Positions 16,776 to 60,800 of a stretch of DNA of 64,000 nucleotides are shown here, piece after piece (the first letter of the stretch is position 1; each line of letters starts with the position of its first letter). The translations under genes and the position numbers were made by a program. The stretch spans positions 1-64,000 of the forward strand of contig NIVC01000656.1 of assembly GCA_002269645.1 (NCBI GenBank), written 5' to 3'. The notes under the pieces were generated by a model. The model had not been told where the DNA came from and made no database searches. It was given only the letters and a program-made list of their open reading frames with translations. This DNA is from Macrostomum lignano. Taxonomy: Eukaryota.

Positions 16776-16950
16776 GGGAGAGGAGAGGAGAAGAGAGTAG
16801 AGGAGAGTAGAGTAGAGTAGAGTAGAGGAGAGGAGAGGATAGGAGAGAGGAGAGGAGAGGAGAGGAGAGAGGGGAGGAGAGGACAGAGGAGAGGAGAGAG
16901 GGGAGGAGAGGACAGAGGAGAGGAGAGAGGGGAGAAGATAGGAGATTAGA
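15745..16950. repeat. (GAGAG)n/(GAGTA)n polypurine pentamer array
   Basis: Direct reading. Confidence 0.95.
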
Positions 16951-18505: not shown

Positions 18506-21500
18506 CTACTGACAGTAGATTGTTACCCGACCGCAATTGACGCACACATTGAAGGCAGACTCCGGCTGCGAGGCATCCAAATCACAGGCGACGCCATTAG
18601 CCAGCCACAATCGCTGATTAGTCAAAGCCAGGGTGCCCCGGTCAACATCAACTCCATCTGCTAGCCAATCCTTCAATTCCCAATCCTTCACAGCAGCATC
18701 CAACTGTTGTTGGCGCCGAGCGTTGGCATTGTTGACAGCTAGGCGAATAGCTCGACCGGGTAGGGTTGACGTGCGAGTACAGCCGCACTCTTCACAACAG
18801 CTGCTGCTTCTGTTGCCAGTGCTGTTGCTGCTATCAGTGCTAATCAAGTCGATAGCTTGGTCCAACTGCTGGGCGGCGGTTTTCCTGGAATCAATTCGAT
18901 AGCATTCGATGCTGGCATTGGCCAACCTGGGCTGCACAGTTTCGCAATAGCCGCCAGCTGCTAGGAATATTCGGCGACAGTTTCTGCTGCTGCTGCTGCT
19001 CCTAGAAGATATTAATTGGCTAACGGTGGACTCGCGAGCCTTGGACATGTTTGACAGTGAACTCGGCGTGCAGATCACTTCGATGCCGAACTGGTCCCGC
19101 AGGCGCGAGTCTAGACCGCGAAGTGCGGGATCAACTCCCACTATAACAGAGCCATTATTAGTGCTCGCTGTCTTCAAATCTGACTCTGCCATTGCTGGAA
19201 GAAACATTGATTCGACAATTAGGCGGCTCTCATCGCTAGTAGCGGCCAATAGAAGCGCCTGGCGCACCAACAGCGGGCACAGGGCGTCCAGAGCGGCGTA
19301 AACAATCTGACTGCGGCGCAAGGGTCGCCGGGACCAGTCGCTCAGCCGTTCAGATTTGTCCAAACGCCTGCCGAGCACTTGCTGGCACAGTTCGCTCAGG
19401 CCGCGCTCGCCGCCACACTCGTCTGTAGCGGACCGGTTCAGCCGATGCAGCAGCTCCGGATGCTCGGCTACTAATCTCTTTGCTAATCCGTCCAGATCAA
19501 CCAGGCCGTTGAACTGAACAGCAGAAGGCAGCGGAGAGCCAGCCGCAGACAGAACTTGACTTAATCGGCGAAGATCTTCGCCAATGCCGATGCCCAGCTT
19601 GGGCACCGCGGGATCGGCCAGGACGCCAGTCAGACTGAGCCAGTGCTGTTGCTTCACCTGCAACAGGCTGGGCAAGTCGAATAGGTAAACTCGACGGTTG
19701 GGCTCCTCAATTGCAATCTGTAATAGCTGGATTAAAGCCGATGATGAGGCTGGGCAGCTGTTTGAATTCGATGACCATTCAGCGTCAATGCCGAGACGAC
19801 TGGCTGCCTGTTGAATGGGAATAGAAATGATGGAGTAGATATATTCTTACTGATTAGCGTGCAGTGACTTTAAATGGTGTACTGCATGGCTTCACGTATG
19901 ATCAATATCAGCCTCTTAGCTTGCAACCTGTTAGAGTGCAGCCTGGTAGATAGAGTGCAGCCTGGTAGATAGTGTAACCTGTTAGATAGAGTGCAGTCTG
20001 TTAGATAGGATGTAACCTGTTAGATAGGGTGTAACCTGTTAGATAGTGTAACCTGTTAGATAGAGTGCAGCCTGGTAGATAGAGTACAGTCTGTTAGATA
20101 GGATGTAACCTGTTAGATAGGGTGTAACCTGTTAGATAAGGTGTAACCTGTTAGATAGTGTAACCTGTTAGATAGGGTGTAACCTGTTAGATAGGGTATA
20201 ACCTGTTAGATAGGGTGTAACCTGTTAGATAGTGTAACCTGTTAGATAGGGTGTAACCTGTTAGATAGGGTGTAACCTGATAGATAGGGCGCATCCTGTT
20301 AGATAGAGTGCAGCCTGTTAGATAGTTTGTAACCTGTTAGATAGAGTGCAGCCTGTTAGATAGTTTGTAACCTGTTAGAGTGCAGCCTGTTAGATAGTTT
20401 ATAACCTGTTAGATAGAGTTCAGCCTGTTAAATAGTGTAACCTGTTATATAGAGTGCAGCCTGCAAATCCCCCAATCAAGATCCCGCAAAAGACCAGAAA
20501 AGGGAAAATTATAGAAACTTCAATGTTAGAAAAAACATTTCCTAACCGTGCTTTATTCACTGATAAAAATCTAATCGATTTGATCAACAAACACAATACT
20601 ACTGTAGACGCGGGGTCAACGATGCGTTAAAAACCCGATAGCAAAAACGCATATTTATATACAAGCGCCTAACGGGACCTGCGAGAAGGCCAGAGCAGGC
20701 ACACACGACACACAGAGAAAGCAAGTTTGACTTAGTTGCCATGGGCGGTACTCAGTCCTGGCTATCGTGCGACAAAACCTATCCAAACCCAACAGGGCAG
20801 TCGCAGCCGCCTATTAACTCGGCTGGTAGTCACCATGGCAGCATTAATCACACGACCGATGCAGGCAGTTTGCCATTGGCAATGGCCATGTTTTTAATCG
20901 CACTATTGGGTGTATTGGTCTGCACCTGTGTGGCCAACTGCTTAGCCATCGGTTGCGGTTGCTGCTACTGCTGCTGTTGCCAAACGAACAGTGGTGAGCA
21001 GCAAGGACGCCAGGCCGATGATAATTCTGGCTCTGCGCCATCCAGTGAGGCTGAAGACTCGGTTAACGACGATGATGATGAGGTAGTCAAGATAGTGACG
21101 ACGGCGTCTGAGCTGCCGCAGGCGCAGGCCCCAGCACAGCCAGCTGCTGGTTTCCATGACAACGCAGGATTTTTGAGCTACTATTATTGACAAAGATCGA
21201 CTCTGCGTGACCCGAGCTGACCTGACTCTGCGTGACCCGAGCTGACCCGACTGCTGACTCCGCGTGACCTGACTCCGCGTGACCTGAGCTGACCCGAGCT
21301 GACCTGACTCTGCGTGACCCGAGCTGACCCGACTGCTGACTCCGCGTGACCTGAGCTGACCCGAGCTGACCTGACTCTGCGTGACCCGAGCTGACCCGAC
21401 TGCTGACTCCGCGTGACCTGAGCTGACCCGAGCTGACCTGACTCTGCGTGACCCGAGCTGACCCGACTGCTGACTCCGCGTGACCTGAGCTGACCCGAGC

Positions 21501-29100: not shown

Positions 29101-30730
29101 TCATGGGCCGAGCTCTCAACGACGGCCTCCCGTCAATCCAACCATCGCAGCCTGTGCAGCACGACCGCGCCGAACTCGCAAAGCGCCACGAGGCCTACAA
29201 CAACCAGATCGCAGCAGGTTTCAACCGCTCCAGGAGGGCCAAGGCAGCCAATGTCAAGCCGGGTTCGGCGGTTCTTCGCAAGCGGACGAGACGCACGAAA
29301 ATTCAAACGCCTTTCGAGCTCGAACCCTGGACCGTCACCGACAGGCGAGGCGATTCCTACGTCCTGCGGCAAGGCGACCGGACATGCACTCGCCACCTGA
29401 CGCACATCCGGCCTCTGACAGCGACCGAGGACCCACCACCAGAAGCGGACGCCGGCGCCGCCTCGCCGGAGCGCGGCATTGCTGAGAGGCCGCACCCGAG
29501 AGCGGCCAAGGACAAGCCTATCAGCTACAGAGTTTGACGGGTTTTGACGGGTAACTGGTGCTAAGGGCTGAGACAAGTGTTTTTTACCCTTAATGTTTTA
29601 TTCCTTTTTCCTTATCCTTTTAATCCGCATTTTTGAGCTTTTTCGTTTTTTGGGGAGAAGTGTAATTGCCTCGCAATATTATTATCAATTTGTTCTAAAT
29701 AGGCGAGTGAGTTATATTATAAATGTACATCTTGTGTCGCATGAGTCATGTACGCCGTACGCGTAAAACCTCAAATATATATATCGCTAACCTGGCCAGT
29801 TAGGGCCCCATGCTTGATTTTCTCGCTCAGCTTAACACGCGGCCTTGAGACTTTACAGATGGGATCTCAATCTGTGCCGGATGGGATCTCAATTTGTGAC
29901 AGATAGGATCTCAAAATCTATGACAGATGGGATCTCAATCTATGACAGATAGGATCTCAATCTGTGACAGATGGGATCTCAATCTGTGCCGGATGGGATC
30001 TCAATCTGTGCCGGATGGGATCTCAATCTGTGCCGGATGTGATCTCAATCTTTGCCGGATGGGATCTTAATCTGTGCCGGATGGGATCTCAATCTTTGCC
30101 GGACGGGATCTCAATCTATGACAGATGGGATCTCAATCTATGACAGATGGGATCTCAATCTATGACAGATGGGATCTCAATCTATGACAGATGGGATCTC
30201 AATCTATGACAGATGGGATCTCAATCTATGACAGATGGGATCTCAATCTATGACAGATGGGATCTCAATCTATGACATACGGGATCTCAATACGGGAGTT
30301 CAATAATCGTACAATAAGTCCTCATTGGCATCCCAGCACCAACCTGATTCTCCAACTGTCGCCGCCATCCCTCAGCCTCCTGCATCCAGTCCCTGGAGAT
30401 TGGCTCGGCATAGGCTGTCCTTCGAGCGGATTCGTCCAAATCCGACAGCAGATTTCTGGCTCGCTCCCTTGCCGCTCTCATCTCGTCGGCTGATACGCCG
30501 GCTCGCGAGGTCGGCTGCTTTGTGGTTGAGTCGTCAACTCGGGTGATTCCTGCGCCGCTGAAACCGCCGCGGTATTTCGGCACATAGGCCAGTCTGGATT
30601 GCCAGCTTGAGCTGGAGGCGACTCCATGCTGCTGCGGCACCAATCGACCGCAGTAATCATCGTCCGAATCTGACTCGTAATAATACTCGTCTGAGTCGTC
30701 TCCGGCGTCGCATACAAATCGACTAGACAT
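18506..30730 (-). CDS. EXD3: Exonuclease mut-7 homolog / EXD3, 951 aa; exons 30730-30344, 24803-24393, 23592-23246, 22617-22209, 19807-18506
   Basis: All five exons join in phase (387+411+347+409+1302 = 2856 nt). DEDDy motifs: GIDAEW (ExoI), [13 protein letters not shown] (ExoII), [11 protein letters not shown] (ExoIII). N-terminal [11 protein letters not shown] motif, C-terminal Mut7-C-like region with CEEC...CVNC zinc ribbon. Minus-strand AATAAA near 18445-18450. Exon 1 is the least certain. Confidence 0.9.
19920..20462. repeat. ~18-bp minisatellite (TGTAACCTGTTAGATAGG) in EXD3 intron 4
   Basis: Direct reading. Confidence 0.9.
20741..21190 (+). CDS. Small N-myristoylation-motif single-pass membrane protein (149 aa), nested antisense in EXD3 intron 4; paralog of 43372-43641
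   Basis: MGGTQS (MGxxxS); hydrophobic [27 protein letters not shown]; [10 protein letters not shown] cluster; acidic tail; FHDNAGF. AG 5 nt upstream of the ATG, AATAAA near 21960. The N-terminus and tail motif are conserved with the second copy. Confidence 0.75.
   Translation: MGGTQSWLSCDKTYPNPTGQSQPPINSAGSHHGSINHTTDAGSLPLAMAMFLIALLGVLVCTCVANCLAIGCGCCYCCCCQTNSGEQQGRQADDNSGSAPSSEAEDSVNDDDDEVVKIVTTASELPQAQAPAQPAAGFHDNAGFLSYYY
21200..21903. repeat. Composite GC-rich minisatellite (CTGCGTGACCCGAGCTGACCTGAC core; ~72-bp compound units, then 31-bp units), likely in the 3' UTR of the nested ORF
   Basis: Direct reading; lies between the stop at 21190 and AATAAA near 21960. Confidence 0.9.
22635..23215. 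repeat. (GACA)n microsatellite filling EXD3 intron 3
   Basis: Direct reading. Confidence 0.95.
23780..24330. repeat. Purine-rich minisatellite (AGGGAGAGAAGGGAGAC(AGGGAGA)) in EXD3 intron 2
   Basis: Direct reading. Confidence 0.9.
24848..25292. repeat. 22-bp minisatellite (GATGGGATCTCAATCTGTGCCG), left arm, split by the gypsy insertion
   Basis: The same unit resumes at 29858. Confidence 0.95.
25293..29857 (+). mobile_element. Full-length Ty3/gypsy LTR retrotransposon (Mag-like clade, inferred)
   Basis: LTRs 25293-25489 and 29661-29857 (197 bp, TG...CA, no difference seen by eye). 5-bp TSD GATGG (25288-25292 / 29858-29862). PBS-like TGGCGTCGC after the 5' LTR, polypurine tract GGGGAGAAG before the 3' LTR. 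Domain order gag-PR-RT-RH-IN. Confidence 0.97.
25527..29537 (+). CDS. gag-pol polyprotein interrupted by one in-frame TAG (28149-28151); protease catalytic Asp replaced by Gly
   Basis: Two Zn knuckles (CYRC..H..C; CLAC.KPNH..AC); PR motif LVGSGAS (expected LVDSGAS); RT ([16 protein letters not shown]); RH ([29 protein letters not shown]); IN (H..H..C..C, DFYGP, SDNGPPF, ANGATER). ORFs 25380-28151 and 28197-29537 are in the same frame. Confidence 0.92.
29858..30290. repeat. 22-bp minisatellite, right arm
   Basis: Continuation of the array at 24848-25292. Confidence 0.95.
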
Positions 30731-30802: not shown

Positions 30803-31577
30803 CTCGCTATCTATATACCCGAGTGCTTAATGATATCGGAGCTAATTACCTTCACTATCTATATACCTGAATGCTTAATGATATCGGAGCTAATTACCTT
30901 CACTATCTATATACCCGAGTGCTCAATGATATCGGAGCTAATTACCTTCACTATCTATATACCTGAGTGCTTAATGATATCGGAGCTAATTACCTTCACT
31001 ATCTATATACCTGAGTGCTTAATGATATCGGAGCTAATTACCTTCACTATCTATATACCTGAGTGCTTAATGATATCGGAGCTAATTACCTTCACTATCT
31101 ATATACCTGAGTGCTTAATGATATCGGAGCTAATTACCTTCACTATCTATATACCTGAGTGCTTAATGATATCGGAGCTAATTACCTTCACTATCTATAT
31201 ACCTGAGTGCTTAATGATATCGGAGCTAATTACCTTCACTATCTATATACCTGAGTGCTTAATGATATCGGAGCTAATTACCTTCACTATCTATATACCT
31301 GAGTGCTTAATGATATCGGAGCTAATTACCTTCACTATCTATATACCTGAGTGCTTAATGATATCGGAGCTAATTACCTTCACTGTCTATATACCGGAGT
31401 GCTTAATGATATCGGAGCTAATTACCTTCACTATCTATATACCGGAGTGCTTAATGATAACGGAGCTAATTACCTTCACTATCTATATACCTGAGTGCTT
31501 AATGATATCGGAGCTAATTACCTTCACTATCTATATACCGGAGTGCTTAATGATATCGAAGCTAATTACCTTCACTA
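30803..31577. repeat. 48-bp minisatellite (TATCTATATACCTGAGTGCTTAATGATATCGGAGCTAATTACCTTCAC), about 16 near-identical copies
   Basis: Direct reading; explains the 16-aa periodic ORF 30830-31600. Confidence 0.95.
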
Positions 31578-33340
31578 TGACAGAGTTCTTAAAACAATAG
31601 AATGTACAAGGTTCTATAATTATTTAACCGCTTTCAGTTCATTTAATTCTTTCATATGTAGCTCTCTAAGTGTACAACACATTACTAGGAAATTGTGCAG
31701 TAATATGTACTTTTTGCATAAGAGAGCACAATGTACTTTTGCAAGATTTAAAAATTGAGCGCAGACATTATAATAATGAGTCTGGAACAGAGTGCATCTT
31801 GCATTTTGATTTATATTACAAATTATCAAATTTCTCAATACTAGCAACCCCTACCCACTCAAATCATATGAACATTAGTAATTATAATGTAGCTTGCCAA
31901 AAATGCTGCAGAAATTATTCTTCTGCAACAAGCACAGAAAAGCTAGATCTGGCACAAGCTATTTGTTATGTTGCAAGATTAAAAAATTGAGCACAGACAT
32001 GTAAGTATTATTGGTCTGGAACAGAGTGCATCTTGCGTAATCAGATAATATTGGTACATTATGTAATTTGCTTATACTGAGAAGTGAATCAATTTTTACT
32101 ACATTTTTACCCAATAGTCTAACAACAAACTAGCTTTTTTACTATGAGTAGCTAACCGACACCTAAATGGTTTTTTAAAATAGTCTTCCAACTATACTTA
32201 TTGTCTTATGTGCCGAAAAAAACACAAAAGAGGCAACAGCCGCTAATATTAAATTTTTATTTGTGCGCCAAGAACTCGCAGATCAGATGAATTTTGTTAT
32301 AACTTGATCTACGAAGTGAAACACAAACTTCCAGAATTCTTGAATCCAAATTCAAACAAAAATTTACTTGTTTTATAATTATTATCGTAGCGACAGTAGT
32401 ATCAGTAGTCAGTAGTATATAGGCATGGCCACCACTACCAGTAGTATGCGGTAGTACGAGAGGCTCGACATCAAAGAGAAACTGCACAGATTACTGATGC
32501 GAGTTAAAACACGGATCACAATATTTTCAAGTATAAAAAGACATTATTTTAATTAGCTACTCTGAGTAATAGGTATATGCATTAGAATATTAAATATATG
32601 TACTTTGACCAGCCGATTAAACAGAAACGCAAGCAAATATAATAAAGTACATAGAAAGAAACCATTTGGAAATATTATTGAAACTGCAGGGCTGTCAATA
32701 AGGAATTATAATGAATCAGGAGCCAGTGCTATCAATATTAAAAAGGTTATAATTCAGAGCATTTCCACCAATGCAGATTAAAAATCGCAATAATCAAAAT
32801 TGTTACTTTTTCTGTCAAGAGAAACTCAAAGAAGGAACACGAAGGGGAGTTAGGAAAACTAACTAGACAACTAATCTATGCAGTTTGAAAATTAAAAAAA
32901 TTACAAGACGACAACACTGCATTACTACTGAAAGTGTGAAAACTATTATGGAATATGAAACGTTATAATAAGCAGTATCGTTTAACTTGTTGGTCGATAA
33001 TGTGATGACGAAAATGACGTTTCAATATCGTCATCAGTTATGCAATATGTAAAATCACAGTGCAAAGCGAACAGGTTTATTGGCATGCCTCTGTGTAATC
33101 AATTTTTGTTTATTTAATAATACGCTCGTAATGATGATATGTACTTTATGCGGATGTACTAATAAACTAAATACCCCCCCCCCGATTACTATATAAACTA
33201 CTTGGATCAAATAGACAGAAGCAACATAGACAAAAAGTTACAATAGAATAGACAGGAAACCATATTAAAATAAAACAAGAATACATGTAACACAGTTAAC
33301 TGAACATATTTGGTTGCATTATTATCTACGGTAATTATTC

Positions 33341-43371: not shown

Positions 43372-43641
43372 ATGGGAGGCAATCAGTCCTGGCTAAACTG
43401 CGATTCAGCATTGCCAGCTCCGGCTGGTCAGCAGCAGACTGAAGAGGCCGAAGGCAGCCTGTTGCTAGCCGCCCTGCTGTTAATCGGTACAGTACTGCTC
43501 ACTCTGCTCATCACCGCCATCGCTGTTTGCGTAGTCATGATGCGTCGTCAACGAAACGAAGCGCCTGGTACACCGTCCGAGGATATGGACTTCGAAACAT
43601 CTCGGTCGGCTGCTGCGTTCGAGAATAAAGGCTTTAAATGA
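43372..43641 (+). CDS. Small N-myristoylation-motif single-pass membrane protein (89 aa); paralog of 20741-21190
   Basis: MGGNQSWLNCD; TM LLLAALLLIGTVLLTLLITAIAVCVVMM; RRQR; tail AFENKGFK. AG 5 nt upstream of the ATG. A GC-rich island in AT-rich DNA. Confidence 0.75.
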   Translation: MGGNQSWLNCDSALPAPAGQQQTEEAEGSLLLAALLLIGTVLLTLLITAIAVCVVMMRRQRNEAPGTPSEDMDFETSRSAAAFENKGFK

Positions 43642-44899: not shown

Positions 44900-47800
44900 C
44901 AAGGGTTGGCAAACACGTTTACCTCAAGGGCCAGATGAGGAATCTAGCGCATGACTGCTGAGAGGAGAGGGTGAAATGGAATAGAGAAGAGAGGAGAGGA
45001 GAGGAGAGGAGAGGAGAGGAGAAGAGAGGAGAGGAGAGGAGAGGAGAGGAGAGGAGAGGAGAGGAGAGGAGAGGAGAGGAGAGGAGAGGAGAGGAGAGGA
45101 GAGGAGAAGAGAGAGAGGAGAGGAGAGGAGAGGAGAGGAGAGGAGAGGAGAGGAGGAGAGGAGAGGAGAGGAGAGAGAGAGAGGAGAGGAGAGGAGAGGA
45201 GAGAGAGGAGAGGAGAGGAGAGGAGAGGAGAGGAGAGAGAGGAGAGGAGAGGAGAGAGGAGAGAGAGGAGAGGAGAGAGAGAGGAGAGGAGAGGAGAGGA
45301 GAGGAGAGGAGAGGAGAGGAGAGGAGAGGAGAGAGAGGAGAGGAGAGAGAGGAGAGGAGAGGAGAGAGAGAGGAGAGGAGAGGAGAGGAGAGGAGAGGAG
45401 AGGAGAGGAGAGGAGAGAGAGGAGAGGAGAGGAGAGGAGAGGAGAGGAGAGGAGAGGAGAGGAGAGGAGAGGAGAGGAGAGGAGAGTAGAGGAGAGTAGA
45501 GTAGAGTAGAGTAGAGTAGAGGAGAGGAGAGGACAGGAGAGGAGAGGAGAGGAGAGTAGAGTAGAGTAGAGTAGAGTAGAGTAGAGTAGAGGAGAGGAGA
45601 GGACAGGAGAGGAGAGGAGAGGAGAGTAGAGTAGAGTAGAGTAGAGAAGAGTAGAGTAGAGGAGAGGAGAGGAGAGGACAGGAGAGGAGAGGAGAGGAGA
45701 GTAGAGTAGAGTAGAGTAGAGAAGAGTAGAGTAGAGGACAGGAGAGGAGAGGACAGGAGAGGAGAGGAGAGGAGAGTAGAGTAGAGTAGAGTAGAGTAGA
45801 GTAGAGTAGAGGAGAGGAGAGGACAGGAGAGGAGAGGAGAGGAGAGTAGAGTAGAGGAGAGGAGAGGACAGGAGAGGAGAGGAGAGGAGAGGAGAGTAGA
45901 GTAGAGTAGAGTAGAGTAGAGTAGAGGAGAGGAGAGGACAGGAGAGGAGAGGAGAGGAGAGTAGAGTAGAGTAGAGTAGAGTAGAGTAGAGTAGAGTAGA
46001 GTAGAGTAGAGTAGAGTAGAGGAGAGGAGAGGACAGGAGAGGAGAGGAGAGGAGAGTAGAGTAGAGTAGAGTAGAGTAGAGTAGAGTAGAGGAGAGGAGA
46101 GGACAGGAGAGGAGAGGAGAGGAGAGTAGAGTAGAGGAGAGGAGAGGAATGGAGAGGAGAGAAGAGGAGAGGAGAGGAGAGGAGAGTAGAGTAGAGTAGA
46201 GTAGAGTAGAGGAGAGGAGAGGACAGGAGAGGAGAGGAGAGGAGAGTAGAGTAGAGTAGAGTAGAGTAGAGTAGAGTAGAGTAGAGTAGAGTAGAGGAGA
46301 GGAGAGGACAGGAGAGGAGAGGAGAGGAGAGGAGAGTAGAGTAGAGTAGAGTAGAGTAGAGTAGAGTAGAGTAGAGTAGAGTAGAGGAGAGGAGAGGACA
46401 GGAGAGGAGAGGAGAGGAGAGTAGAGTAGAGGAGAGGAGAGGAATGGAGAGGAGAGAAGAGGAGAGGAGAGGAGAGGAGAGAAGAGGAGAGAAGAGGAGA
46501 GGAGAGGAGAGGAGAGTAGAGTAGAGTAGAGTAGAGTAGAGGAGAGGAGAGGACAGGAGAGGAGAGGAGAGGAGAGTAGAGTAGAGTAGAGTAGAGTAGA
46601 GTAGAGTAGAGTAGAGTAGAGTAGAGTAGAGGAGAGGAGAGGACAGGAGAGGAGAGGAGAGGAGAGGAGAGTAGAGTAGAGTAGAGTAGAGTAGAGTAGA
46701 GTAGAGTAGAGTAGAGTAGAGTAGAGTAGAGGAGAGGAGAGGACAGGAGAGGAGAGGAGAGGAGAGGAGAGGAGAGTAGAGTAGAGTAGAGTAGAGTAGA
46801 GTAGAGGAGAGGAGAGGACAGGAGAGGAGAGGAGAGGAGAGTAGAGTAGAGTAGAGTAGAGTAGAGTAGAGTAGAGTAGAGTAGAGTAGAGTAGAGTAGA
46901 GGAGAGGAGAGGACAGGAGAGGAGAGGAGAGGAGAGGAGAGTAGAGTAGAGTAGAGTAGAGTAGAGTAGAGTAGAGTAGAGGAGAGGAGAGGACAGGAGA
47001 GGAGAGGAGAGGAGAGTAGAGTAGAGGAGAGGAGAGGAATGGAGAGGAGAGAAGAGGAGAGGAGAGGAGAGGAGAGTAGAGTAGAGTAGAGTAGAGTAGA
47101 GGAGAGGAGAGGACAGGAGAGGAGAGGAGAGGAGAGTAGAGTAGAGTAGAGTAGAGTAGAGTAGAGTAGAGTAGAGTAGAGTAGAGTAGAGGAGAGGAGA
47201 GGACAGGAGAGGAGAGGAGAGGAGAGGAGAGTAGAGTAGAGTAGAGTAGAGTAGAGTAGAGTAGAGTAGAGTAGAGTAGAGGAGAGGAGAGGACAGGAGA
47301 GGAGAGGAGAGGAGAGTAGAGTAGAGGAGAGGAGAGGAATGGAGAGGAGAGAAGAGGAGAGGAGAGGAGAGGAGAGAAGAGGAGAGAAGAGGAGAGGAGA
47401 GGAGAGGAGAGTAGAGTAGAGTAGAGTAGAGTAGAGGAGAGGAGAGGACAGGAGAGGAGAGGAGAGTAGAGTAGAGTAGAGTAGAGTAGAGTAGAGTAGA
47501 GTAGAGTAGAGTAGTAGTAGAGTAGAGGAGAGGAGAGGACAGGAGAGGAGAGGAGAGGAGAGGAGAGTAGAGTAGAGTAGAGTAGAGTAGAGTAGAGTAG
47601 AGTAGAGTAGAGTAGAGTAGAGTAGAGTAGAGGAGAGGAGAGGACAGGAGAGGAGAGGAGAGGAGAGGAGAGTAGAGTAGAGTAGAGTAGAGTAGAGTAG
47701 AGGAGAGGAGAGGACAGGAGAGGAGAGGAGAGGAGAGTAGAGTAGAGTAGAGTAGAGTAGAGTAGAGTAGAGTAGAGTAGAGTAGAGTAGAGGAGAGGAG

Positions 47801-48132
47801 AGGACAGGAGAGGAGAGGAGAGGAGAGGAGAGTAGAGTAGAGTAGAGTAGAGTAGAGTAGAGTAGAGTAGAGGAGAGGAGAGGACAGGAGAGGAGAGGAG
47901 AGGAGAGTAGAGTAGAGGAGAGGAGAGGAATGGAGAGGAGAGAAGAGGAGAGGAGAGGAGAGGAGAGAAGAGGAGAGAAGAGGAGAGGAGAGGAGAGGAG
48001 AGGAAAGGAGAGGAGAGGAATGGAGAGGAGAGGAGAGGAGAGACACAAACCTTGAGTCGGCCAGATTGCTATTGTGAAGTGTCAAAGGACCGAGGGCGCA
48101 CGTGGCCCGCGAGCCGAAATTGGCCGACCCTG
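44900..48132. mobile_element. hAT-like MITE expanded by an internal 3-kb pentamer array
   Basis: Left end CAAGGGTTGGCAAAC...AAGGGCCAGAT; right end GGCCCGCGAGCCGAAATTGGCCGACCCTG (reverse complement CAGGGTCGGCCAA). The right end is homologous to 16973-17065. No TSD match. Confidence 0.55.
44985..48040. repeat. 3-kb (GAGAG)n/(GAGTA)n polypurine array with ~890-bp higher-order periodicity
   Basis: The rare variant GGAAT occurs at 46146, 46441, 47036, 47336 and 47927. Confidence 0.95.
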
Positions 48133-48895: not shown

Positions 48896-49225
48896 TGTGT
48901 ATGTACGCGCAGAACCCCCTCTCCTCCTTGTGCTCATCCTGCACTGGATTGGATTGCTTGATCTTGGACTGGCTCCTCCTGTCCTCCCTTCCCCTCCCCA
49001 TCACCTCTTCCCACGTTTCTTGCACGAAGATGTAGCTGCTATGGATTTTCCTTTCTCCCCTCTGGCAGATGCTCAGGGCGGATCAGTAGGTTGTGGGAGA
49101 GATAAATTTTAGACTGCAGTTCAGATGTTCAGGGCAAAAAAGTTAAGAATGGAAATAGGCATCATTGAAATTAGCAGGGAATGAACAGCAGCTGTCATCT
49201 AACCGAGACGATCTGCGGCAGGGGA

Positions 49226-50341
49226 ATGTCAAAACTAAAATTATTAGGCGCGGTTGTCTTCATCGCAGTTGCTTTAGTAACGCTCAGCGGATGGGACGAG
49301 AGACTCTTTGGAAAGACTCGCCGCCCGTTGCTGAGGCCAACTGATCACGACTCGAATTCGGCTGAATCGAACTTGCTGCCGCCTTTGTGCGGCAAGTTGC
49401 AGGCAAGATTTCCTCCCGGCTCGATCCCACCGCTGGTGCACTGGACTAGCAGGGACGGCCGAATTCCAGCTAAACTGGTGAACAGCGTGCTGACTTGGCG
49501 ACGCCTGTTGAACAGCAGTGGTGGCGACGCGATTAAGTGGCAATTCATGCACTGGGACGACAGGCAGATCTCTGAGCTGGTCTCAAAGCACTACCCGATG
49601 CTGAACAGGAGCTACGCCAAGCTGGTCAACGGTCTGGAGCGATCTGACATCGGCAGGCTGGTGGTGCTGCACCATGTCGGCGGCATGTACGTCGACACGG
49701 ACGTGGAATTGTTGCGCGATCTTTCGCCGTTGATGAATTCGTCTCGTCTACTGCTCGGTAAGGACACCAGCCGGGCCAGCTGTTGCAGCGCCGTGCTCGT
49801 TGAGGAACCGGTTGAGCACGCTCTGTTTGTGCACAACATGCCAAGACTGGTCTCCAATGCCGTGATGCTGAGCAGGGCGAATCACAGCTTCCTGAATTAT
49901 TTATTAAACTCTTGGCCAACCTGGTTTGAAGCTAACTGGGCCAGAAAAACGAACAGGAGACACACGCAAGCGCCCGAGGTCACCGGGCCGCTCATGCTGA
50001 ACCGGTTCTTCAATGAGTACAGAGCCTGGCCGCCGGACCAGCGACCGTCGGACTGGCCGGGCCTCCAGCTGGTGGACGCTGAACTGTTCCAGCCGAGATT
50101 TGACGAGGCCAGCCAGCACCACCGGTTGAAGAAGGTCTGCTCCACTGCTCCGGAGAAATTGAACCGGCTGAAGAGGCTGCACTGTGAACGGCTGGCGCAG
50201 GCAAAGTTTAGAAATCAGCCAATTCCAAAGCGCGCCTTCACAGTGCACGCCTTCATGCATCTGAGCTACACAAACACCATGGACTTGGCCAATTCGAAGA
50301 CTATCGCTGATTTGTTGCCAATTTCGCACTGTCAATTATGA
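49226..50341 (+). CDS. Intronless GT32-family (OCH1/SUR1-like, DXD) glycosyltransferase, type II membrane protein, 371 aa
   Basis: N-terminal signal anchor LLGAVVFIAVALVTL; IPPLVHWT; HWDD; ERSDIGRLVVLHHVGGMYVDTDVE (RSD..R...L...GG.Y.D.D); VSNAVM; VTGP; HAFMH. Confidence 0.88.
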   Translation: MSKLKLLGAVVFIAVALVTLSGWDERLFGKTRRPLLRPTDHDSNSAESNLLPPLCGKLQARFPPGSIPPLVHWTSRDGRIPAKLVNSVLTWRRLLNSSGGDAIKWQFMHWDDRQISELVSKHYPMLNRSYAKLVNGLERSDIGRLVVLHHVGGMYVDTDVELLRDLSPLMNSSRLLLGKDTSRASCCSAVLVEEPVEHALFVHNMPRLVSNAVMLSRANHSFLNYLLNSWPTWFEANWARKTNRRHTQAPEVTGPLMLNRFFNEYRAWPPDQRPSDWPGLQLVDAELFQPRFDEASQHHRLKKVCSTAPEKLNRLKRLHCERLAQAKFRNQPIPKRAFTVHAFMHLSYTNTMDLANSKTIADLLPISHCQL

Positions 50342-53194: not shown

Positions 53195-56100
53195 TCAATG
53201 AATCACCGCCTCGTCCCAGGGCCCATGAATATTGTTTTTCTGAGCCTGCATAGCAACAAACATAATTGGGCAGATTAGCATGATGAAGCAGCTCAATAGA
53301 AGGAAGCAGCACGCTGCCGGCATTGAGATGAAGCACATAGCGCATTGAGCAGCCAGATTGAGTAGAAATGTCAGGCCCAGACTCAATACGGGCTGGAATG
53401 GCGAGTGCAGACCGACAGACATGTTCCGGCGCAGCTCCGGCCAGAAGGCGAAGACGAACAGGGCGAGCTCCACTGTGGTGAACGTGTGCAGCGAGCTGGG
53501 CAGGCGGGAGGCCAGGCAGATTGCGGCGAATACGGCCGAGTTTAGGGAGAACGATTTCAATACTCTGGCGGGCGAGCGAGTTTTATTGTTGTTTTCGATA
53601 CATATCGGCTCATTGGGCGCTTTATATTCAATTTATTGTTAAATTAAAGTGCGTCAGAGGGTCAATTTGTATTACTTTCTACGTGTCTTAGCATCTTAGG
53701 GTCCAAGTGTTACAGGGTATTAGTGTCTTAGGGTCCAAGTGTTACAGGGTATTAGTGTCATAGGGTCCAAGTGTTACAGGGTATTAGTGTCATAGGGTCC
53801 AAGTGTTACAGGGTATTAGTGTCATAGGGTTTAAGTGTTACAGGGTATTAGTGTCTTAGGGTCCAAGTGTTACAGGGTATTAGTGTCATAGGGTCCAAGT
53901 GTTACAGGGTATTAGTGTCATAGGGTCCAAGTGTTACAGGGTATTAGTGTCATAGGGTCCAAGTGTTACAGGGTATTAGTGTCATAGGGTCCAAGTGTTA
54001 CAGGGTATTAGTGTCTTAGGGTCTTAGGGTCATAAGGTATACGTGTCATAGAGTCTTTAGGTCTTAGGGTCTAAGTGCCATAGAATCCAAGTGTCATAGG
54101 GTCTAAGTGTCATAGGGTCTTAGTGCCACATGGTCTTCTCTTAAGTAGTATGAGTAGTAAGAATAAGTATAGTGAGTAGTATGGAGTGGACGCTAGCGCT
54201 GTATTCACTACGCAACTCACATTGCTGCTGAGCCGCCATAGTCGTGGAAAAGCAGGTTGGCTGTGAGAAAAAATGCCGTCATAGCGTGAATTGTATCGGT
54301 ACTGATTGTGGCGGTGAGGCTCTTCAATAGCGGCGACCACATCAGGGTGAAGGCGGTGAGCACCAGCAATAGGCGGCAGTGGCCGAATGCTGAAGTGTTA
54401 TTGTTAATTAACATTTATTAAAACCCGAAATATTCATGCCCAGTTCCGCTGAACACAGCACGCACACGCTCATAGTGTCATGCAGTCTTTGTGTCATAAG
54501 CTCATAGAGTCATGCAGTCTTTGCGTCATAAGCTCATAGTGTCATGCAGTCTTTGTGTCATAAGCTCATAGAGTCATGCAGGCTTTGTGTCATAAGCTCA
54601 TAGTGTCATGCAGTCTTTGTGTCATAAGCTCATAGAGTCATGCAGTCTTTGCGTCATAAGCTCATAGTGTCATGCAGTCTTTGCGTCATAAGCTCATAGT
54701 GTCATGCAGTCTTTGTGTCATAAGCTCATATAGTCATGCAGTCTTTGTGTCATAAGCTCATAGTGTCATGCAGTCTTTGTGTCATAAGCTCATAGTGTCA
54801 TACAGTCTTTGTGACATAAGCTCATAGTGTCATACAGTCTTTGTGACATAAGCTCATAGTGTCATACAGTCTTTGTGACATAAGCTCATACTCGTAGTGT
54901 CATTCAGTCTTTGTGTCATAAGCTCATAGTGTCATACAGTCTTTGTGTCATAAGCTCATAAGAGTCATGCAGTCTTTGTGTCATAAGCTCATTGTGTCAT
55001 ACAGTCTTTGTGACATAAGCTCATAGTGTCATACAGTCTTTGTGTCATAAGCTCATAGTGTCATACAGTCTTTGTGACATAAGCTCATAGTGTCATACAG
55101 TCTTTGTGACATAAGCTCATAGTGTCATACAGTCTTTGCGTCATAAGCTCATAGTGTCATGCAGTCTTTGTGTCATAAGCTCATAGAGTCATGCAGGCTT
55201 TGTGTCATAAGCTCATAGTGTCATGCAGTCTTTGTGTCATAAGCTCATAGAGTCATGCAGTCTTTGCGTCATAAGCTCATAGTGTCATGCAGTCTTTGCG
55301 TCATAAGCTCATAGTGTCATGCAGTCTTTGTGTCATAAGCTCATAGAGTCATGCAGTCTTTGTGTCATAAGCTCATAGTGTCATGCAGTCTTTGTGTCAT
55401 AAGCTCATAGTGTCATACAGTCTTTGTGACATAAGCTCATAGTGTCATACAGTCTTTGTGACATAAGCTCATAGTGTCATACAGTCTTTGTGACATAAGC
55501 TCATACTCGTAGTGTCATTCAGTCTTTGTGTCATAAGCTCATAGTGTCATACAGTCTTTGTGTCATAAGCTCATAAGAGTCATGCAGTCTTTGTGTCATA
55601 AGCTCATTGTGTCATACAGTCTTTGTGACATAAGCTCATAGTGTCATACAGTCTTTGTGTCATAAGCTCATAGTGTCATACAGTCTTTGTGACATAAGCT
55701 CATAGTGTCATACAGTCTTTGTGACATAAGCTCATAGTGTCATACAGTCTTTGTGTCATAAGCTCATAGTGTCATACAGTCTGTGTCATAAGCTCATAGT
55801 GTCATACAGTCTGAGTCATGCAGTCTTTGCAACATAAGCTCATAGTGTCATGCAGTCTTTGTGTCATAAGTTCATAGTGTCTTGCAGTCTGTCATGCAGT
55901 CTTTGCAACATAAGCTCATAGTGGCATGCAGTCTTTGTGTCATGCATTCCTTGTCTCAAGCAGTCTTTGTGTCATGCGTCTTTGTGTCATGCATCTTTGT
56001 GCCATGCATCTTTGTGTCATGCAGTCTTTGTGTCATGCATCTTTATGTCATGCAGTCTTTGTGTCATGTAGTCTTTGCATTTCAGTGTCCCAGTTTCCAG

Positions 56101-57863: not shown

Positions 57864-60800
57864 TCAAGCGAACAGTTGCGCATAGCTGTCACGCAACGCC
57901 TCCGGTTTCAACCTGTCCAAACGCGTTTGAAAATCGCCCTCAGCTCGTAGCCGTCTGGCCAGCCCTGGCCCACCGCGGCACAGCCAACGCAATCGTTTAA
58001 CCAACTGAGTGTCAGTGTTGTACAAACAATCCGATGGGAACAGTTCCGGATAAGCGAGACGACGCGGAGCGAGCGGGTAGCAACCGGCCGATGTGGCTTC
58101 GAGCATGGCTAAACCAAAGAATTCGTGTTCGGCAGTGGACACAACTACGTGACAGGCTGACAGGCAGGCTAAATAGGCTTGACGATTCTCTAAGTAGCCC
58201 CAGTGTGCGATCTGATCGGATGGAAGGCGCTTCTTAGCCGCCTCAAAGGCTGGCGGAGGCGGCCCGGCAAACGACTGTCCGAGGATGCACAGAGCAAAAT
58301 TGGTTTCGCCCGAGTCGGCCAGAGCGAAGATGGCGGTAAAAAATGAGTCTGGATTCTTGTCGTGCTCCCAACGATGCGGCCAAAGAATTAAAAGCCGATT
58401 GTCTAGCTGATTGGATGGGGACTGAAGGAATGAGGGATAGAGCTCAGTGTCCGATGGTGGCTGCTGTAGAGCCTCCAGGTCTTGAGGTTGTTGTTGCTGT
58501 TGGATGCTACGTTGTTTCTGAGTGTCTAGATCTTGTTTCTGAGCAGAAATCCGCGACCTCTTCGGTTCCAGCTGGCCATCAGCAAGGCTAGCCAGCGGAA
58601 CAATAGGCAGGTATAATATCTGAGACTTAGCAGCAATCCCAGCACCCAGACCGCGAGTTCTGTAGTCGGGCATAGCATTGAGAAATGAATCGATACCGTG
58701 CAAAAAAGTATCCATATTGTGCCGGGAATTGAACAGCACAAGGTCGGCGGCCAGTGCGGTGAGTATCTGATTGTAGCCATACTGGAAATCTCTCTCGCCT
58801 CGCATCTTTCTAACCGGATAGACCAGCTGGTTCTCGTGAAAATAAACTAATTTCTTTGTAGCTGCCAGACACGGACAGAGACCCACTAGTTCGGCTAGGC
58901 TGAGCACGCTGCTGCAGAACAGGTGACTAAACTGCTTGTCTGAAAATTTTATGTTTAGACAACAGATACTAAAGTAACTAGATGGGCCACTCAGGCATAT
59001 ATACTTAGTAAAACAGCTTTCTACTTTCAGTTCAGTAGCAAAGAAGAATACATAAGCTATTTTATAAAAAAGCCAGCTGAAATGACTTTGATAAGTTTAG
59101 AAGCCCAAGCTTGCAGGCGTAAACAACTTGCTAATTGGTACGGCAGTAATGTACATTGGCCAGTCCACTGAAATGTACATGGCAGCCTTAGGCTGATATT
59201 CCGAGACAGGCAATAAAAATTGGGGCGGGGCGGGGCGGGGCGGGCGGGGCGGGGCGGGGCGGGCGAGGGTTAGGGGTAGTGTGGAAAGGCGTGGTTGGGA
59301 GTTTAAGCTTGGGGGTAGCCAATAAATAAACCTCGGCTTTAAAAATGCTTCCGTTTAACATGCTACTGAACTGAAAGTAGCTTACACACAAATGTGCTGA
59401 GTGGCCCAACTAGTTATTCTAGTATCTGTGGTTAAGACAGACTAATTAAGAATCAGTGCGCAATTTAACAATAAAAAGCGTATTTGTTACTAACAGTAGC
59501 AACTCAAAACTGATATTTAAACTGCTGCGCTGGGCGTGGTTTTTGAAGCTCGAATTTAGGCCATTTTTTAAAACTAGCAAATTTAAACACAATTTTCTAC
59601 TATTAGTACAATCATGATGAAACAGATCTTTTAACAATAAAATATCGCTACTAATCATTAAAAAATCGATCGATTCCTCTAAAATGGAATTTAAAGACAG
59701 CTGGCAACAGTTTGTATAGATTATAGTTCTACTTAGCTAACCGATACGAACCAGTTCTTTACAAAATAAAACACTGTGTGTGTGCACGATAGAGTGCAGT
59801 GCAGGTACTGCGTAGCCAGCATGACAAGGTGAACCAGAGTTAACGAGTGAATGCTTGGCTATTGGAACCATTGTGATCAGTGTTAGCACCATTGGGAACA
59901 GTACTATCGTTATTTAGGATCACTATTAATGTTATTAGGATCAATATTCCAGCCCTTAGGATCAATACTAGTGTTATAAGGATAAATTATTAGAGATATT
60001 ATTAGGACCAATATTAGCGTCCTTAGGATCAATACTAGCTAGATATTAGGATCCATATTAGATATTAGGATAGACATTCGCTAAATTAGGATCATAATTA
60101 GTGCCACTAAGATTAATATGAGCACCATTTACACCAGAATGTAAAACTAGTTCGTGATTTTCGGCGTCTGTAATGCAACGACCCCAGCCAGCTATAAACA
60201 TATTGAACAAAACATTACAAAAGCAATATAAGACAAGGAAGAAGAGACAGCCACAACAAAGGAATTAACACAGCTAATCTAAGGAATGCTCAAACCAGTA
60301 CATTGTCCATTGCCCTACTGAGTGATGTGCACAAGGACATTTACCGTCTTGGTGGCAATCCGTAAAGCAGATTATCTCATACGGCACTTGCGTAGGAGTC
60401 AGCATAGGACTACGACCCAAAGGTTCAATGCAGTGCAAAAATGCTACAGCCATAAATTTACTCACTGAATACGAACTAAACTGCTCAGACACCACACTGA
60501 TCCCACAAAACTGCTCAGACACCACACTAATCCCACAAAACTGCTCAGAGACCACAATGATCCCACAAAACTGCTCAGACACCACACTGATCCCACAAAA
60601 CTGCTCAGAGACCACAATGATCCCACAAAACTGCTCAGACACCACACTGATCCCACAAAACTTCTCAGAGACCACACTGATCCCACTAAACTGCTCAGAG
60701 ACCACAATGATCCCACAAAACTGCTCAGACAACACACTGATCCCACAAAACTGCTCAGACACCACACTGATCCCACAAAACTGCTCAGAGACCACAATAA

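What the first reader, a model, noticed from the sequence alone, without database searches (positions are those of the whole stretch)
43372..43641. Family of tiny myristoylation-motif single-pass proteins (two paralogs: 20741-21190 and 43372-43641) with FAST-fusogen-like architecture
Seen: two intronless ORFs 22.6 kb apart share MGG-x-QSWL-x-CD-xxx-P-x-P-x-GQ-x-Q at the N-terminus, GSL-x-LA at the start of a ~25-aa hydrophobic helix, and F-x(1-2)-N-x-G-F near the C-terminus. Both have an AG 5 nt before the ATG. After the TM helix, one has RRQR and the other CGCCYCCCC. Established: MGxxxS is the N-myristoyltransferase motif; juxtamembrane basic residues and palmitoylated Cys clusters mark the cytosolic side. 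Reovirus FAST proteins (p14/p15: myristoylated short ectodomain, TM, polybasic; p10: palmitoylated di-Cys) are minimal cell-cell fusogens with this layout. Inference: with no signal peptide the topology would be N-out/C-in with a myristoylated exoplasmic peptide, which is rare for cellular proteins. These could be an undescribed host-encoded family of small fusogens or membrane-remodelling/trafficking proteins. I recognise no known family, and no sequence homology to FAST proteins is claimed.
Basis: partly seen in the sequence, partly recalled or inferred. Interest (0 to 1): 0.72.

Follow-up and report, generated by a model that had tools for sequence, protein, structure and literature searches.

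The report
Flatworm-only family of tiny membrane proteins
The two small ORFs are real members of a selectively constrained family of at least four genes, seen so far only in the flatworm Macrostomum, that encodes tiny single-pass membrane proteins with an invariant lipidation-type N-terminus and a trafficking-type C-terminal motif; the family has no described relatives, and the idea that it fuses cells rests on resemblance only.

Summary
ORF A (43372-43641, 89 aa) and ORF B (20741-21190, 149 aa) are paralogs (BLASTP E 3e-11). The window is Macrostomum lignano or a very close relative.

Two more paralogs exist on other scaffolds (Mlig011772.g1, Mlig025670.g1), and A has a syntenic copy (Mlig015330.g1). 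Searches of 1.84 and 5.8 billion proteins, Pfam, PDB, and viral and metagenome contigs found no other relatives.

The family shares:
- an invariant MGGxQSWLxCD N-terminus, which fits the N-myristoyltransferase (NMT) pattern;
- one 26-30 aa hydrophobic helix;
- a juxtamembrane polybasic or poly-Cys cluster;
- an invariant C-terminal N-x-x-F.

A is under purifying selection: dN/dS is 0.11, and the CDS diverges 1.5% against 9.5% in the flank. Three loci carry RNA-seq-derived gene models; B has none.

Charge distribution predicts N-out/C-in. The C-terminal motif is best read as a cytosolic NxxY/F sorting signal that binds PTB or FERM domains.

The FAST-like layout is real, but the ectodomain fusion peptide and the endodomain amphipathic helix are not evident. 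No viral or transposon linkage exists. The AG 5 nt before the ATG is absent from the other two paralogs. Fusogenic function is untested.

The parts
43372..43641 (+). Gene A: intronless CDS, 89 aa plus stop. It is a family member with a syntenic, 99%-identical counterpart, Mlig015330.g1.
   Evidence: dN/dS is 0.11 and there are no indels, while the flanks diverge 9.5%.
43372..43437 (+). A: conserved N-terminal peptide (aa 1-22). MGGNQSWLNCD is invariant across the family at positions 1-3, 5-8, 10-11 and at P15. It fits the NMT pattern PS00008.
43453..43542 (+). A: single hydrophobic transmembrane segment, aa 28-57 (GSLLLAALLLIGTVLLTLLITAIAVCVVMM), including the family-invariant T48 and C53.
   Evidence: Hydropathy. 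AlphaFold2 predicts a helix at 26-62 with block-mean pLDDT of 84-93 over residues 31-60. Invariant columns.
43543..43554 (+). A: juxtamembrane polybasic cluster RRQR (aa 58-61).
43618..43635 (+). A: C-terminal motif FENKGF (aa 83-88). N85 and F88 are invariant in the family. The motif fits the Phi-x-N-x-x-[YF] / NxxY/F class.
   Evidence: Motif class from PMC11589680 and PMC9006456.
43365..43366 (+). AG dinucleotide 5 nt upstream of the ATG of A (cTTTAG|caacaATG). It is a possible splice or trans-splice acceptor, but this is unverified.
   Evidence: It is conserved in the L001 counterpart but absent from the other paralogs.
20741..21190 (+). Gene B: intronless ORF, 149 aa plus stop. It is a divergent paralog with no annotated counterpart in the databases.
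20741..20806 (+). B: conserved N-terminal peptide (aa 1-22), [22 protein letters not shown].
20870..20950 (+). B: hydrophobic transmembrane segment, about aa 44-70.
20951..20980 (+). B: juxtamembrane Cys cluster [10 protein letters not shown] (aa 71-80) in place of the polybasic cluster. It is a candidate multi-palmitoylation site.
   Evidence: Palmitoylation is inferred, not tested.
21152..21172 (+). B: C-terminal motif FHDNAGF (aa 138-144). N-x-x-F is retained, but the upstream Phe is displaced by one residue.
20734..20735 (+). AG dinucleotide 5 nt upstream of the ATG of B (aCTTAG|ttgccATG).

Best explanation
A and B belong to a family restricted, as far as the databases show, to Macrostomum. 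It has at least four paralogous loci plus a duplicated or homeologous copy of A.

The proteins are small (89-208 aa) and bitopic, made from intronless genes without a signal peptide.

Predicted topology is type III. A 27-45 aa acidic, Pro-rich N-terminal segment faces the exoplasmic side. A long (26-30 aa) single helix spans the membrane. The C-terminal tail is cytosolic.

The tail starts with a polybasic cluster, or in B a palmitoylatable Cys cluster. It continues as a disordered acidic and Ser-rich stretch of variable length. It ends in an invariant [FY]-[DE]-N-x-x-F.

I read that last motif as an NPxY-like NxxY/F signal for PTB or FERM-domain adaptors of the SNX17, Numb, Dab or ARH type. 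The proteins would then cycle between plasma membrane and endosomes.

The invariant N-terminal undecapeptide MGGxQSWLxCD would be the functional exoplasmic head. Its single Cys suits a disulfide-linked dimer, and its Gly2/Ser6 suit N-myristoylation.

Shown here: the family exists, is constrained and is transcript-annotated at three loci; it has a one-helix architecture with the stated charge asymmetry and motif invariance; and it has no known homologs.

Inferred: topology, lipidation, adaptor binding and cellular role.
For: Family membership:
- A and B are paralogs at E 3e-11.
- A profile search of 1.84e9 representative proteins found only Mlig015330.g1, Mlig011772.g1 (7.6e-12) and Mlig025670.g1 (3.1e-9).
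- A five-sequence profile over 5.8e9 proteins found no others.

Constraint:
- A against its syntenic counterpart shows 4 differences in 270 nt: 3 synonymous and 1 non-synonymous (F83Y).
- dN/dS is 0.11. The CDS has no indels, while 400 nt upstream has 9.5% mismatches and 24 gap columns (P 5e-8).
- Invariant residues use different synonymous codons among paralogs.

Transcription:
- Mlig_3_7 gene models derive only from RNA-seq assemblies plus TransDecoder (PMC5730564).
- All three annotated CDSs are single-exon.

Architecture:
- There is one hydrophobic segment. The N-side net charge is -1 to -6.
- A, Mlig011772.g1 and Mlig025670.g1 have 3-9 K/R within 15 aa after the helix. The PS00008 pattern is true in all four.
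- AlphaFold2 gives one confident helix and the rest is disordered.

C-terminal motif:
- N and F are invariant in otherwise unalignable tails of 32-149 aa, always 1-5 residues from the stop.
- NxxY/F is the cargo motif read by the SNX17 FERM domain (PMC11589680; PMC9006456).
- Mlig025670.g1 has FDNPAF, the classical FxNPx[YF] form.

Genomic setting: the host loci sit among ordinary genes (Arf-family, LRWD1-like, EXOSC1).
Against: - No experimental or expression-pattern data could be retrieved. The gene IDs occur in no searched paper text or supplement.
- Topology rests only on the positive-inside rule and motif logic.
- N-myristoylation of an N-terminus that is then translocated is rare for cellular proteins. 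Either the lipidation or the N-out topology may therefore be wrong.
- NxxF is a short motif. In B the upstream Phe is shifted by one residue, so B does not fit Phi-x-N-x-x-F strictly.
- B has no annotated counterpart, lacks a polybasic cluster, and has a 3' flank of satellite with no poly(A)-like hexamer within 700 nt. It may not be expressed.
- The family is visible in only one annotated species, so deep conservation cannot be assessed.
Confidence: 0.5

Rival explanations
1. One reading: these are host-encoded FAST-like cell-cell fusogens. A myristoylated short ectodomain would destabilise the apposed bilayer, while the polybasic or Cys cluster and the tail drive trafficking, clustering and pore formation.
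For: - The layout matches the class: 89-208 aa, no signal peptide, one transmembrane helix, predicted N-out/C-in, an invariant MGxxxS, an ectodomain of 27-45 aa, and a polybasic cluster in 3 of 4 paralogs.
- It satisfies the published operational screen for sORF2/FAST-like proteins.
- The ectodomains carry P-x-P stretches, loosely recalling the proline-rich ectodomain described for p15 (PMC7830690).
- FAST proteins lack sequence homology to each other, so the absence of homology does not exclude the class.
Against: - No hydrophobic patch or fusion-peptide-like element lies in the ectodomain beyond W7-L8.
- No convincing endodomain amphipathic helix is seen. The maximum hydrophobic moment in an 18-aa window is 0.28-0.43, and AlphaFold2 confidence is low outside the transmembrane helix.
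- B lacks the polybasic motif.
- All known members of the class are encoded by viruses or LTR elements. These are dispersed host genes.
- No viral hits were found.
- The same layout fits many non-fusogenic type III membrane proteins.
- No functional data exist.
Confidence: 0.1
2. The N-terminus is cytosolic and lipid-anchored. Gly2 would be myristoylated and Cys10 palmitoylated. The hydrophobic stretch would then be either a re-entrant hairpin with both ends cytosolic, or a type II anchor with the C-terminus outside.
For: - NMT acts in the cytosol, and cellular myristoylated N-termini normally stay there.
- The invariant Cys10 near Gly2 suits dual acylation.
- The hydrophobic stretch is long for a single span, at 28-30 aa in three paralogs.
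- A hairpin would also keep the NxxF tail cytosolic.
Against: - AlphaFold2 predicts one continuous helix at 26-62.
- There is no conserved Pro or Gly break in mid-segment.
- The type II variant would place up to 9 K/R, the Cys cluster and the NxxF motif on the exoplasmic side, against the positive-inside rule.
Confidence: 0.12
3. The genes are domesticated or transduced small ORFs from Ty3/gypsy retroelements or a virus, of the sORF2-like type.
For: - Gypsy pol ORFs lie near two of four loci: 4.1 kb downstream of B on the same strand, and 2.3 kb from Mlig025670.g1 on the opposite strand.
- sORF2/FAST-like ORFs occur upstream of gag in insect Metaviridae.
Against: - The window element is bounded by identical 199-nt LTRs at 25292-25490 and 29660-29858 and sits inside a split 22-nt satellite, so B lies outside it.
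- The L003 pol is a truncated fragment inside a 23-nt satellite.
- The two pol proteins are only 33% identical, so they are different elements.
- The loci of A and Mlig011772.g1 have no RT ORFs.
- The paralogs are 33-39% identical to A and low in copy number, unlike transposon families.
- The IMG/VR scan was empty.
Confidence: 0.05
4. The ORFs are chance or dead ORFs with no protein product.
For: - B has no annotated counterpart and its 3' flank is satellite.
- The window's exact proteins are not on record.
- The window is full of repeat-generated spurious ORFs.
Against: - Similarity at E 3e-11, with motifs conserved at both ends of the ORFs.
- Purifying selection on A.
- Synonymous-only variation at invariant residues.
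- RNA-seq-derived gene models exist for three loci.

For B alone, a silent or decaying copy remains possible, at perhaps 0.25.
Confidence: 0.03

Closest known systems
Reovirales FAST proteins (p14/p15 type)
   Same: Small size, no signal peptide, a single transmembrane helix, predicted N-out/C-in topology, an N-terminal MGxxxS/T motif on the ectodomain side, a juxtamembrane polybasic cluster and a disordered tail (features from PMC7830690).
   Different: - Host-encoded and dispersed paralogs, with no sequence or fold match.
- No evident ectodomain fusion peptide or hydrophobic patch, and no evident endodomain amphipathic helix.
- An invariant C-terminal NxxF is not among the FAST features listed in the review read here (PMC7830690).
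- Fusion activity is untested.
sORF2/FAST-like small ORFs of Metaviridae LTR retrotransposons (bioRxiv 10.1101/2025.03.14.642691)
   Same: The family meets that study's screen: 60-210 aa, one transmembrane helix, N-out/C-in, MGxxxS/T, an ectodomain of 10-50 aa, a tail under 150 aa, and at least 3 K/R within 15 aa after the helix. A, Mlig011772.g1 and Mlig025670.g1 pass; B fails the polybasic criterion.
   Different: The genes are not inside an LTR element or upstream of gag. They lie at unique host loci with a syntenic duplicate. The preprint describes the class in insects, fish viruses and bird viruses, not flatworms.
NPxY / NxxY/F-bearing cargo tails (LDL-receptor-type FxNPxY; SNX17-FERM and PTB-domain ligands)
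   Same: A [FY]-[DE]-N-x-x-F lies at the end of a predicted cytosolic tail. Mlig025670.g1 has FDNPAF. SNX17 reads NxxY/F (PMC11589680).
   Different: Only the short linear motif is shared and there is no homology. Pro is absent in 3 of 4 paralogs (NKGF, NAGF). Binding is untested.
Small type III or short-ectodomain adaptor and accessory subunits (LAT/SIT-type transmembrane adaptors, DAP10/DAP12-like dimers, TMIE, KCNE). This comparison is from my own knowledge.
   Same: A short ectodomain with a single Cys, one transmembrane helix, juxtamembrane Cys or basic residues, and a motif-bearing disordered tail. Weak hits restricted to the transmembrane region were found to SIT and TMIE.
   Different: All hits fall below curated cut-offs: SIT 17.9 against 27.6 bits, and TMIE 12.2 against 27 bits. 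There are no conserved tyrosine motifs, and those families do not have an MGxxxS N-terminus.

Membership tests
FAST proteins (functional class) | Small bitopic protein without signal peptide, N-exo/C-cyt | tested here: met
   By prediction only. The proteins are 89-208 aa with one hydrophobic segment, an acidic N-side and a basic C-side. AlphaFold2 gives a single helix.
FAST proteins (functional class) | N-terminal acylation (myristoylation motif, or palmitoylated Cys) | tested here: inconclusive
   The PS00008 pattern, MG[^EDRKHPFYW]xx[STAGCN][^P], is present and invariant in all members. Actual lipidation cannot be tested here.
FAST proteins (functional class) | Ectodomain fusion peptide (hydrophobic or amphipathic element, or polyproline helix) | tested here: inconclusive
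   Only W7-L8 and P-x-P stretches are present, with no hydrophobic patch. Block-mean pLDDT over residues 1-30 is 48-54.
FAST proteins (functional class) | Juxtamembrane polybasic motif | tested here: met
   RRQR, RRRK and RACRSRHRKRRHRK in three paralogs. B has [10 protein letters not shown] instead.
FAST proteins (functional class) | Endodomain amphipathic helix | tested here: not met
   The best 18-aa hydrophobic moments are 0.28-0.43 (Eisenberg scale), and several of these overlap the transmembrane helix. The A tail helix at 76-82 has low confidence.
FAST proteins (functional class) | Encoded by a non-enveloped virus; induces syncytia | tested here: not met
   Viral origin is not met. The genes are host loci with synteny, and IMG/VR and BFVD searches were empty. 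Syncytium induction cannot be tested with these tools.
sORF2/FAST-like ORFs of Metaviridae | Located inside a Ty3/gypsy element, in the gag-pol orientation | tested here: not met
   B lies 4.1 kb outside the LTR-bounded element at 25292-29858. Mlig025670.g1 is on the opposite strand to a truncated pol. No RT ORFs occur at the other two loci.
NxxY/F (NPxY-like) adaptor-binding cargo | Phi-x-N-x-x-[YF] in a cytosolic tail | tested here: met
   FENKGF, YENKGF, FDNKGF and FDNPAF fit. B has FHDNAGF, with NxxF kept and Phi shifted by one residue. Cytosolic location is predicted, not shown.
NxxY/F (NPxY-like) adaptor-binding cargo | Direct binding to a PTB or FERM domain; motif-dependent trafficking | not testable with these tools
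   Requires pull-down or localisation experiments.
Pfam SIT / TMIE / DUF6479 / EphA2_TM | Score at or above the curated gathering threshold | tested here: not met
   SIT 17.9 against 27.6 bits; DUF6479 17.4 against 25.4; TMIE 12.2 against 27; EphA2_TM 13.8 against 28.9. All cover only the transmembrane region. The PDB TMIE hit is E 0.032.

The most novel reading that the evidence does not exclude
These are the first host-encoded (non-viral, non-transposon) FAST-like proteins. They would be small type III membrane proteins whose N-terminal glycine is myristoylated and then displayed on the exoplasmic face, acting in cell-cell fusion or membrane remodelling in a flatworm.
Probability: 0.1. Interest if true: 0.85.

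Novelty: new variant of a known kind. Interest (0 to 1): 0.4.

Why it matters
If the architecture works as predicted, this family would be a rare cellular example of an NMT-type N-terminus on the exoplasmic side of a type III membrane protein. That arrangement is otherwise documented mainly for viral proteins.

The organism is favourable for testing it, because M. lignano has working transgenesis and RNAi.

Even on the conservative reading, the result adds a lineage-restricted gene family with clear purifying selection and two sharply defined short linear motifs. The family is currently annotated only as 'hypothetical protein'. The conservative reading also gives concrete, cheap experiments: G2A, C10S and N85A/F88A mutants, plus topology tags.

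On present evidence it is a well-supported orphan family with a speculative function, not a demonstrated fusogen.

Tried and rejected
- **Homology.** Pfam at E up to 10 on all four proteins gave only noise from the transmembrane region. A PDB profile search gave only a TMIE hit at E 0.032 over the helix plus basic stretch.
- **Fold search.** Foldseek of the AlphaFold2 model against BFVD gave nothing below E 2.8. The model is one helix, so this was uninformative as expected.
- **Wider relatives.** The profile and word searches found only M. lignano proteins. The IMG/VR scan for MGG[NTS]QSWL matched nothing. The metagenome scan gave 20 pattern matches, none confirmed by tblastn.
- **Exact-protein look-ups.** The window's A, B and the 386-aa glycosyltransferase ORF are not on record, so the window is not an annotated record in the collection.
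- **Expression data.** Mlig015330, Mlig011772 and Mlig025670 occur in no paper's full text. They also occur in none of the supplements held as text for PMC5816591, PMC12896417 and PMC7336406. PMC8629364 and PMC10786194 have no supplements held.
- **Transposon linkage.** This was considered because of the sORF2 preprint and rejected on LTR boundaries and pol divergence.
- **AG at -5 as a family-wide trans-splice acceptor.** This is rejected as a family feature. If the 35-nt SL, which ends in ATG (PMC8629364), were added at that AG, its AUG would lie 8 nt upstream and out of frame. In A it would open a 10-codon overlapping uORF (MQQWEAISPG*), and in B one of more than 50 codons. That argues mildly against that use, but the point needs SL-read data.
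- **Technical note.** L003 and P0003 were readable with the tools but were not available to scripts.

Full report
**Observation**

Both ORFs are present exactly as described.
- Window 43372-43641(+) encodes an 89-aa protein, A.
- Window 20741-21190(+) encodes a 149-aa protein, B.
- They align at BLASTP E 3e-11 over the N-terminal peptide and the hydrophobic segment.
- A six-frame search of the window with the 22-aa N-termini finds only the reciprocal copy (E 5e-8). All other matches have E of 0.7 or more, so there are two copies in the window.
- RRQR (A) and [10 protein letters not shown] (B) follow the hydrophobic helix.
- FENKGF and FHDNAGF lie near the C-termini.
- An AG lies 5 nt before each ATG.

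**Source organism and further members**

- A is 99% identical to 'hypothetical protein BOX15_Mlig015330g1 [Macrostomum lignano]'.
- The contig carrying that gene (NIVC01000654.1, locus L001) is collinear with window ~32.7-44.6 kb. Identity is about 82-94% over the aligned blocks, and the contig includes an Arf-family gene.
- The window is therefore M. lignano, or a very close relative. It is a duplicated or homeologous copy of that region.
- The window's own proteins are not on record.
- An exhaustive HMMER search of 1.84 billion representatives, using a profile of A, B and P0001, returned two more proteins, both from M. lignano: Mlig011772.g1 (E 7.6e-12) and Mlig025670.g1 (E 3.1e-9).
- A five-sequence profile against 5.8 billion proteins added nothing. 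B alone found nothing.
- Scans of IMG/VR and of JGI metagenome contigs for the N-terminal signature found no relatives.
- Pfam, PDB sequences and BFVD folds gave only noise from the transmembrane region, below every threshold.
- The family is real, small, dispersed on different scaffolds among ordinary host genes, and undescribed.

**Anatomy of the family (alignment A2)**

Invariant residues, in A numbering:
- M1 G2 G3 Q5 S6 W7 L8 C10 D11 P15;
- G28 at the start of the hydrophobic helix;
- A33, L45, T48 and C53 inside the helix;
- N85 and F88 at the C-terminus.

Each protein has one hydrophobic segment of 28-30 uncharged residues, or about 27 in B (aa 44-70 read from the translation).
- The N-terminal segment (27-45 aa) has net charge -1 to -6 and contains P-x-P stretches.
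- The first 15 residues after the helix hold 3, 4 and 9 K/R in A, Mlig011772.g1 and Mlig025670.g1. B has a run of eight Cys there.

The tails (32-149 aa) are unalignable and rich in acidic residues and Ser. All end with [FY]-[DE]-N-x-x-F, 1-5 residues before the stop. The forms are FENKGF, YENKGF, FDNKGF and FDNPAF; B has FHDNAGF.

AlphaFold2 on A gives one confident helix at 26-62 and low confidence elsewhere.

**Is it a functional gene?**

- Between A and its syntenic counterpart the CDS has 4 differences in 270 nt: three synonymous third positions and one F83Y change. It has no indels.
- Nei-Gojobori dN/dS is 0.11 (Fisher P 0.05, on small counts).
- The 400 nt upstream show 9.5% mismatches and 24 gap columns. 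The probability of 4 or fewer mismatches in the CDS at that rate is 5e-8.
- Among paralogs, the invariant G2, G3, L8 and D11 are encoded by different synonymous codons, so the constraint is on the peptide and not the DNA.
- Each ATG is the first in-frame ATG after an upstream stop, and all four have G at +4.
- The Mlig_3_7 gene models were built only from RNA-seq-based transcript assemblies, with ORFs called by TransDecoder (PMC5730564).
- The three annotated loci therefore have transcript support, and their CDSs are single-exon.
- B has no annotated counterpart. Its stop codon abuts a 67/31-nt satellite, and no poly(A)-like hexamer occurs within 700 nt.
- B's intact 149-codon ORF keeps motifs at both ends, which argues for recent or current function. 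Its expression is open.

**How it most likely works**

The charge asymmetry, the Cys cluster and the nature of the tail all place the C-terminus in the cytosol and the N-terminus outside. This is a type III topology with no signal peptide. It is an inference from the positive-inside rule and is not shown.

The invariant C-terminal N-x-x-F, preceded by an aromatic residue two positions upstream, is the form of the NPxY-like NxxY/F signals. The FERM domain of SNX17 reads these signals in over 100 cargo tails (PMC11589680; PMC9006456). From my own knowledge, Dab/Numb/ARH-type PTB domains read them too. One paralog has the classical FDNPAF.

I therefore favour small plasma-membrane or endosome-cycling proteins. 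Their tail would engage such adaptors, and their invariant N-terminal undecapeptide would be the exoplasmic functional head. The single ectodomain Cys10 would allow disulfide-linked dimers.

MGG[NST]QS fits PROSITE PS00008. From memory, it resembles known cellular MGGxxS NMT substrates such as BASP1. However, residues 1-11 are almost all invariant, so conservation of G2 and S6 is not independent evidence for myristoylation.

**The FAST-like reading**

The layout resemblance is genuine. The family even passes the operational screen used to define 'sORF2/FAST-like' proteins in insect Metaviridae, nackednaviruses and picornaviruses (bioRxiv 10.1101/2025.03.14.642691).

Against membership:
- FAST endodomains are described as polybasic motif plus amphipathic helix plus disordered tail, and their ectodomains carry a fusion peptide (PMC7830690).
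- Here no amphipathic helix stands out. The maximum 18-aa hydrophobic moment is 0.28-0.43, and this partly falls within the transmembrane helix.
- The ectodomain has no hydrophobic patch beyond W7-L8.
- B lacks the polybasic motif.
- Nothing links the genes to viruses.

Because the sORF2 class sits inside gypsy elements, I checked the Ty3/gypsy ORFs near B and near Mlig025670.g1.
- The window element is bounded by identical 199-nt LTRs (25292-25490 and 29660-29858).
- It is inserted into a 22-nt satellite, which leaves B 4.1 kb outside it.
- The L003 pol is a truncated fragment on the opposite strand inside a 23-nt satellite.
- The two pol proteins are only 33% identical.
- The other two loci have no RT ORFs.
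- Proximity therefore reflects transposon density, not linkage.

Fusion activity remains an untested possibility, which I put at about 0.1.

**The AG at -5**

The AG is present in A, its counterpart and B. In Mlig011772.g1 the nearest AG is at -3/-2, and in Mlig025670.g1 the nearest AG is 15 nt upstream of the ATG. It is not a family feature.

M. lignano trans-splices about 30-39% of its genes to a 35-nt leader that ends in ATG. The acceptor motif is YTNCAG (PMC8629364; PMC5730564).

Joining that leader at the AG would put its AUG 8 nt upstream and out of frame, creating an overlapping uORF. This reading comes directly from the sequence. It speaks mildly against that use, but only SL-read data can decide.

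**Verdict**

The family is a new, constrained, FAST-like-in-layout family with no known relatives.
- The fusogen idea has no positive evidence. The conserved tail motif points to adaptor-mediated trafficking.
- Novelty: an undescribed lineage-restricted family whose architecture is a host-encoded variant of a known architectural class.
- Interest is moderate (0.4). It would be high only if exoplasmic myristoylation or fusion were demonstrated.

Noticed in passing
window 25292-29858 (+): A young Ty3/gypsy LTR retrotransposon. Its gag-pol ORFs at 25380-28151 and 28197-29537 carry zf-CCHC, RVT_1, RNase H and integrase domains. Its 199-nt LTRs are 100% identical. It is inserted into a 22-nt satellite array, which it splits into 24848-25292 and 29855-30291. 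I saw no room for an sORF2-like small ORF between the LTR and gag.
   Followed up: partly
window, whole (e.g. 44984-48042, 15745-16945, 54468-56067, 62634-63880): The window is extremely dense in mini- and microsatellites (46 TRF rows at score 400 or more). It includes a 3-kb (GAGAG)n array with GC skew near +1. These arrays generate long spurious ORFs, such as 44924-48085 (1053 aa) and 30830-31600, whose 'Zfx_Zfy_act' Pfam hit is a repeat artefact.
   Followed up: partly
window 21187-21911: B's stop codon runs directly into 67-nt and 31-nt satellite arrays, so any 3' UTR of B is made of satellite. No AATAAA-like hexamer occurs within 700 nt downstream.
   Followed up: partly
window 18506-19675 (-), ~32.7-36.5 kb (-), 49181-50341 (+), 60274-61497 (-): Neighbouring host genes or fragments are present. 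There is a 3'-5' exonuclease-domain ORF divergent from B. An Arf-family GTPase gene is inferred from synteny with L001. There is a DXD glycosyltransferase (Gly_transf_sug) ORF. A QTMAN_N (tRNA-queuosine mannosyltransferase-like) ORF is largely overlapped by a 30-nt tandem array.
   Followed up: partly
L001 10248 (codon 83 of Mlig015330.g1) vs window 43619: The only amino-acid difference between A and its counterpart is F83Y. It turns FENKGF into YENKGF, a Y-x-N sequence, which from memory is the Grb2-SH2 consensus when phosphorylated. It is not conserved in the family.
   Followed up: no
L002 10001-10069: The GenBank model of Mlig011772.g1 is marked 'partial' and carries 23 extra N-terminal residues read from the 5' UTR. 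The family alignment places the true start at the ATG at L002 10070.
   Followed up: partly
L003 5534-7723 (-) and 340-1371 (-): A truncated gypsy pol (RT-RNaseH-integrase) is embedded in a 23-nt satellite 2.3 kb from Mlig025670.g1. A separate gag-aspartyl-protease ORF lies further upstream. The pol is only 33% identical to the window element.
   Followed up: yes
window 1-64000: There are no Rfam matches at gathering thresholds on either strand, so no SL RNA, snRNA or rRNA genes were detected in the window.
   Followed up: yes
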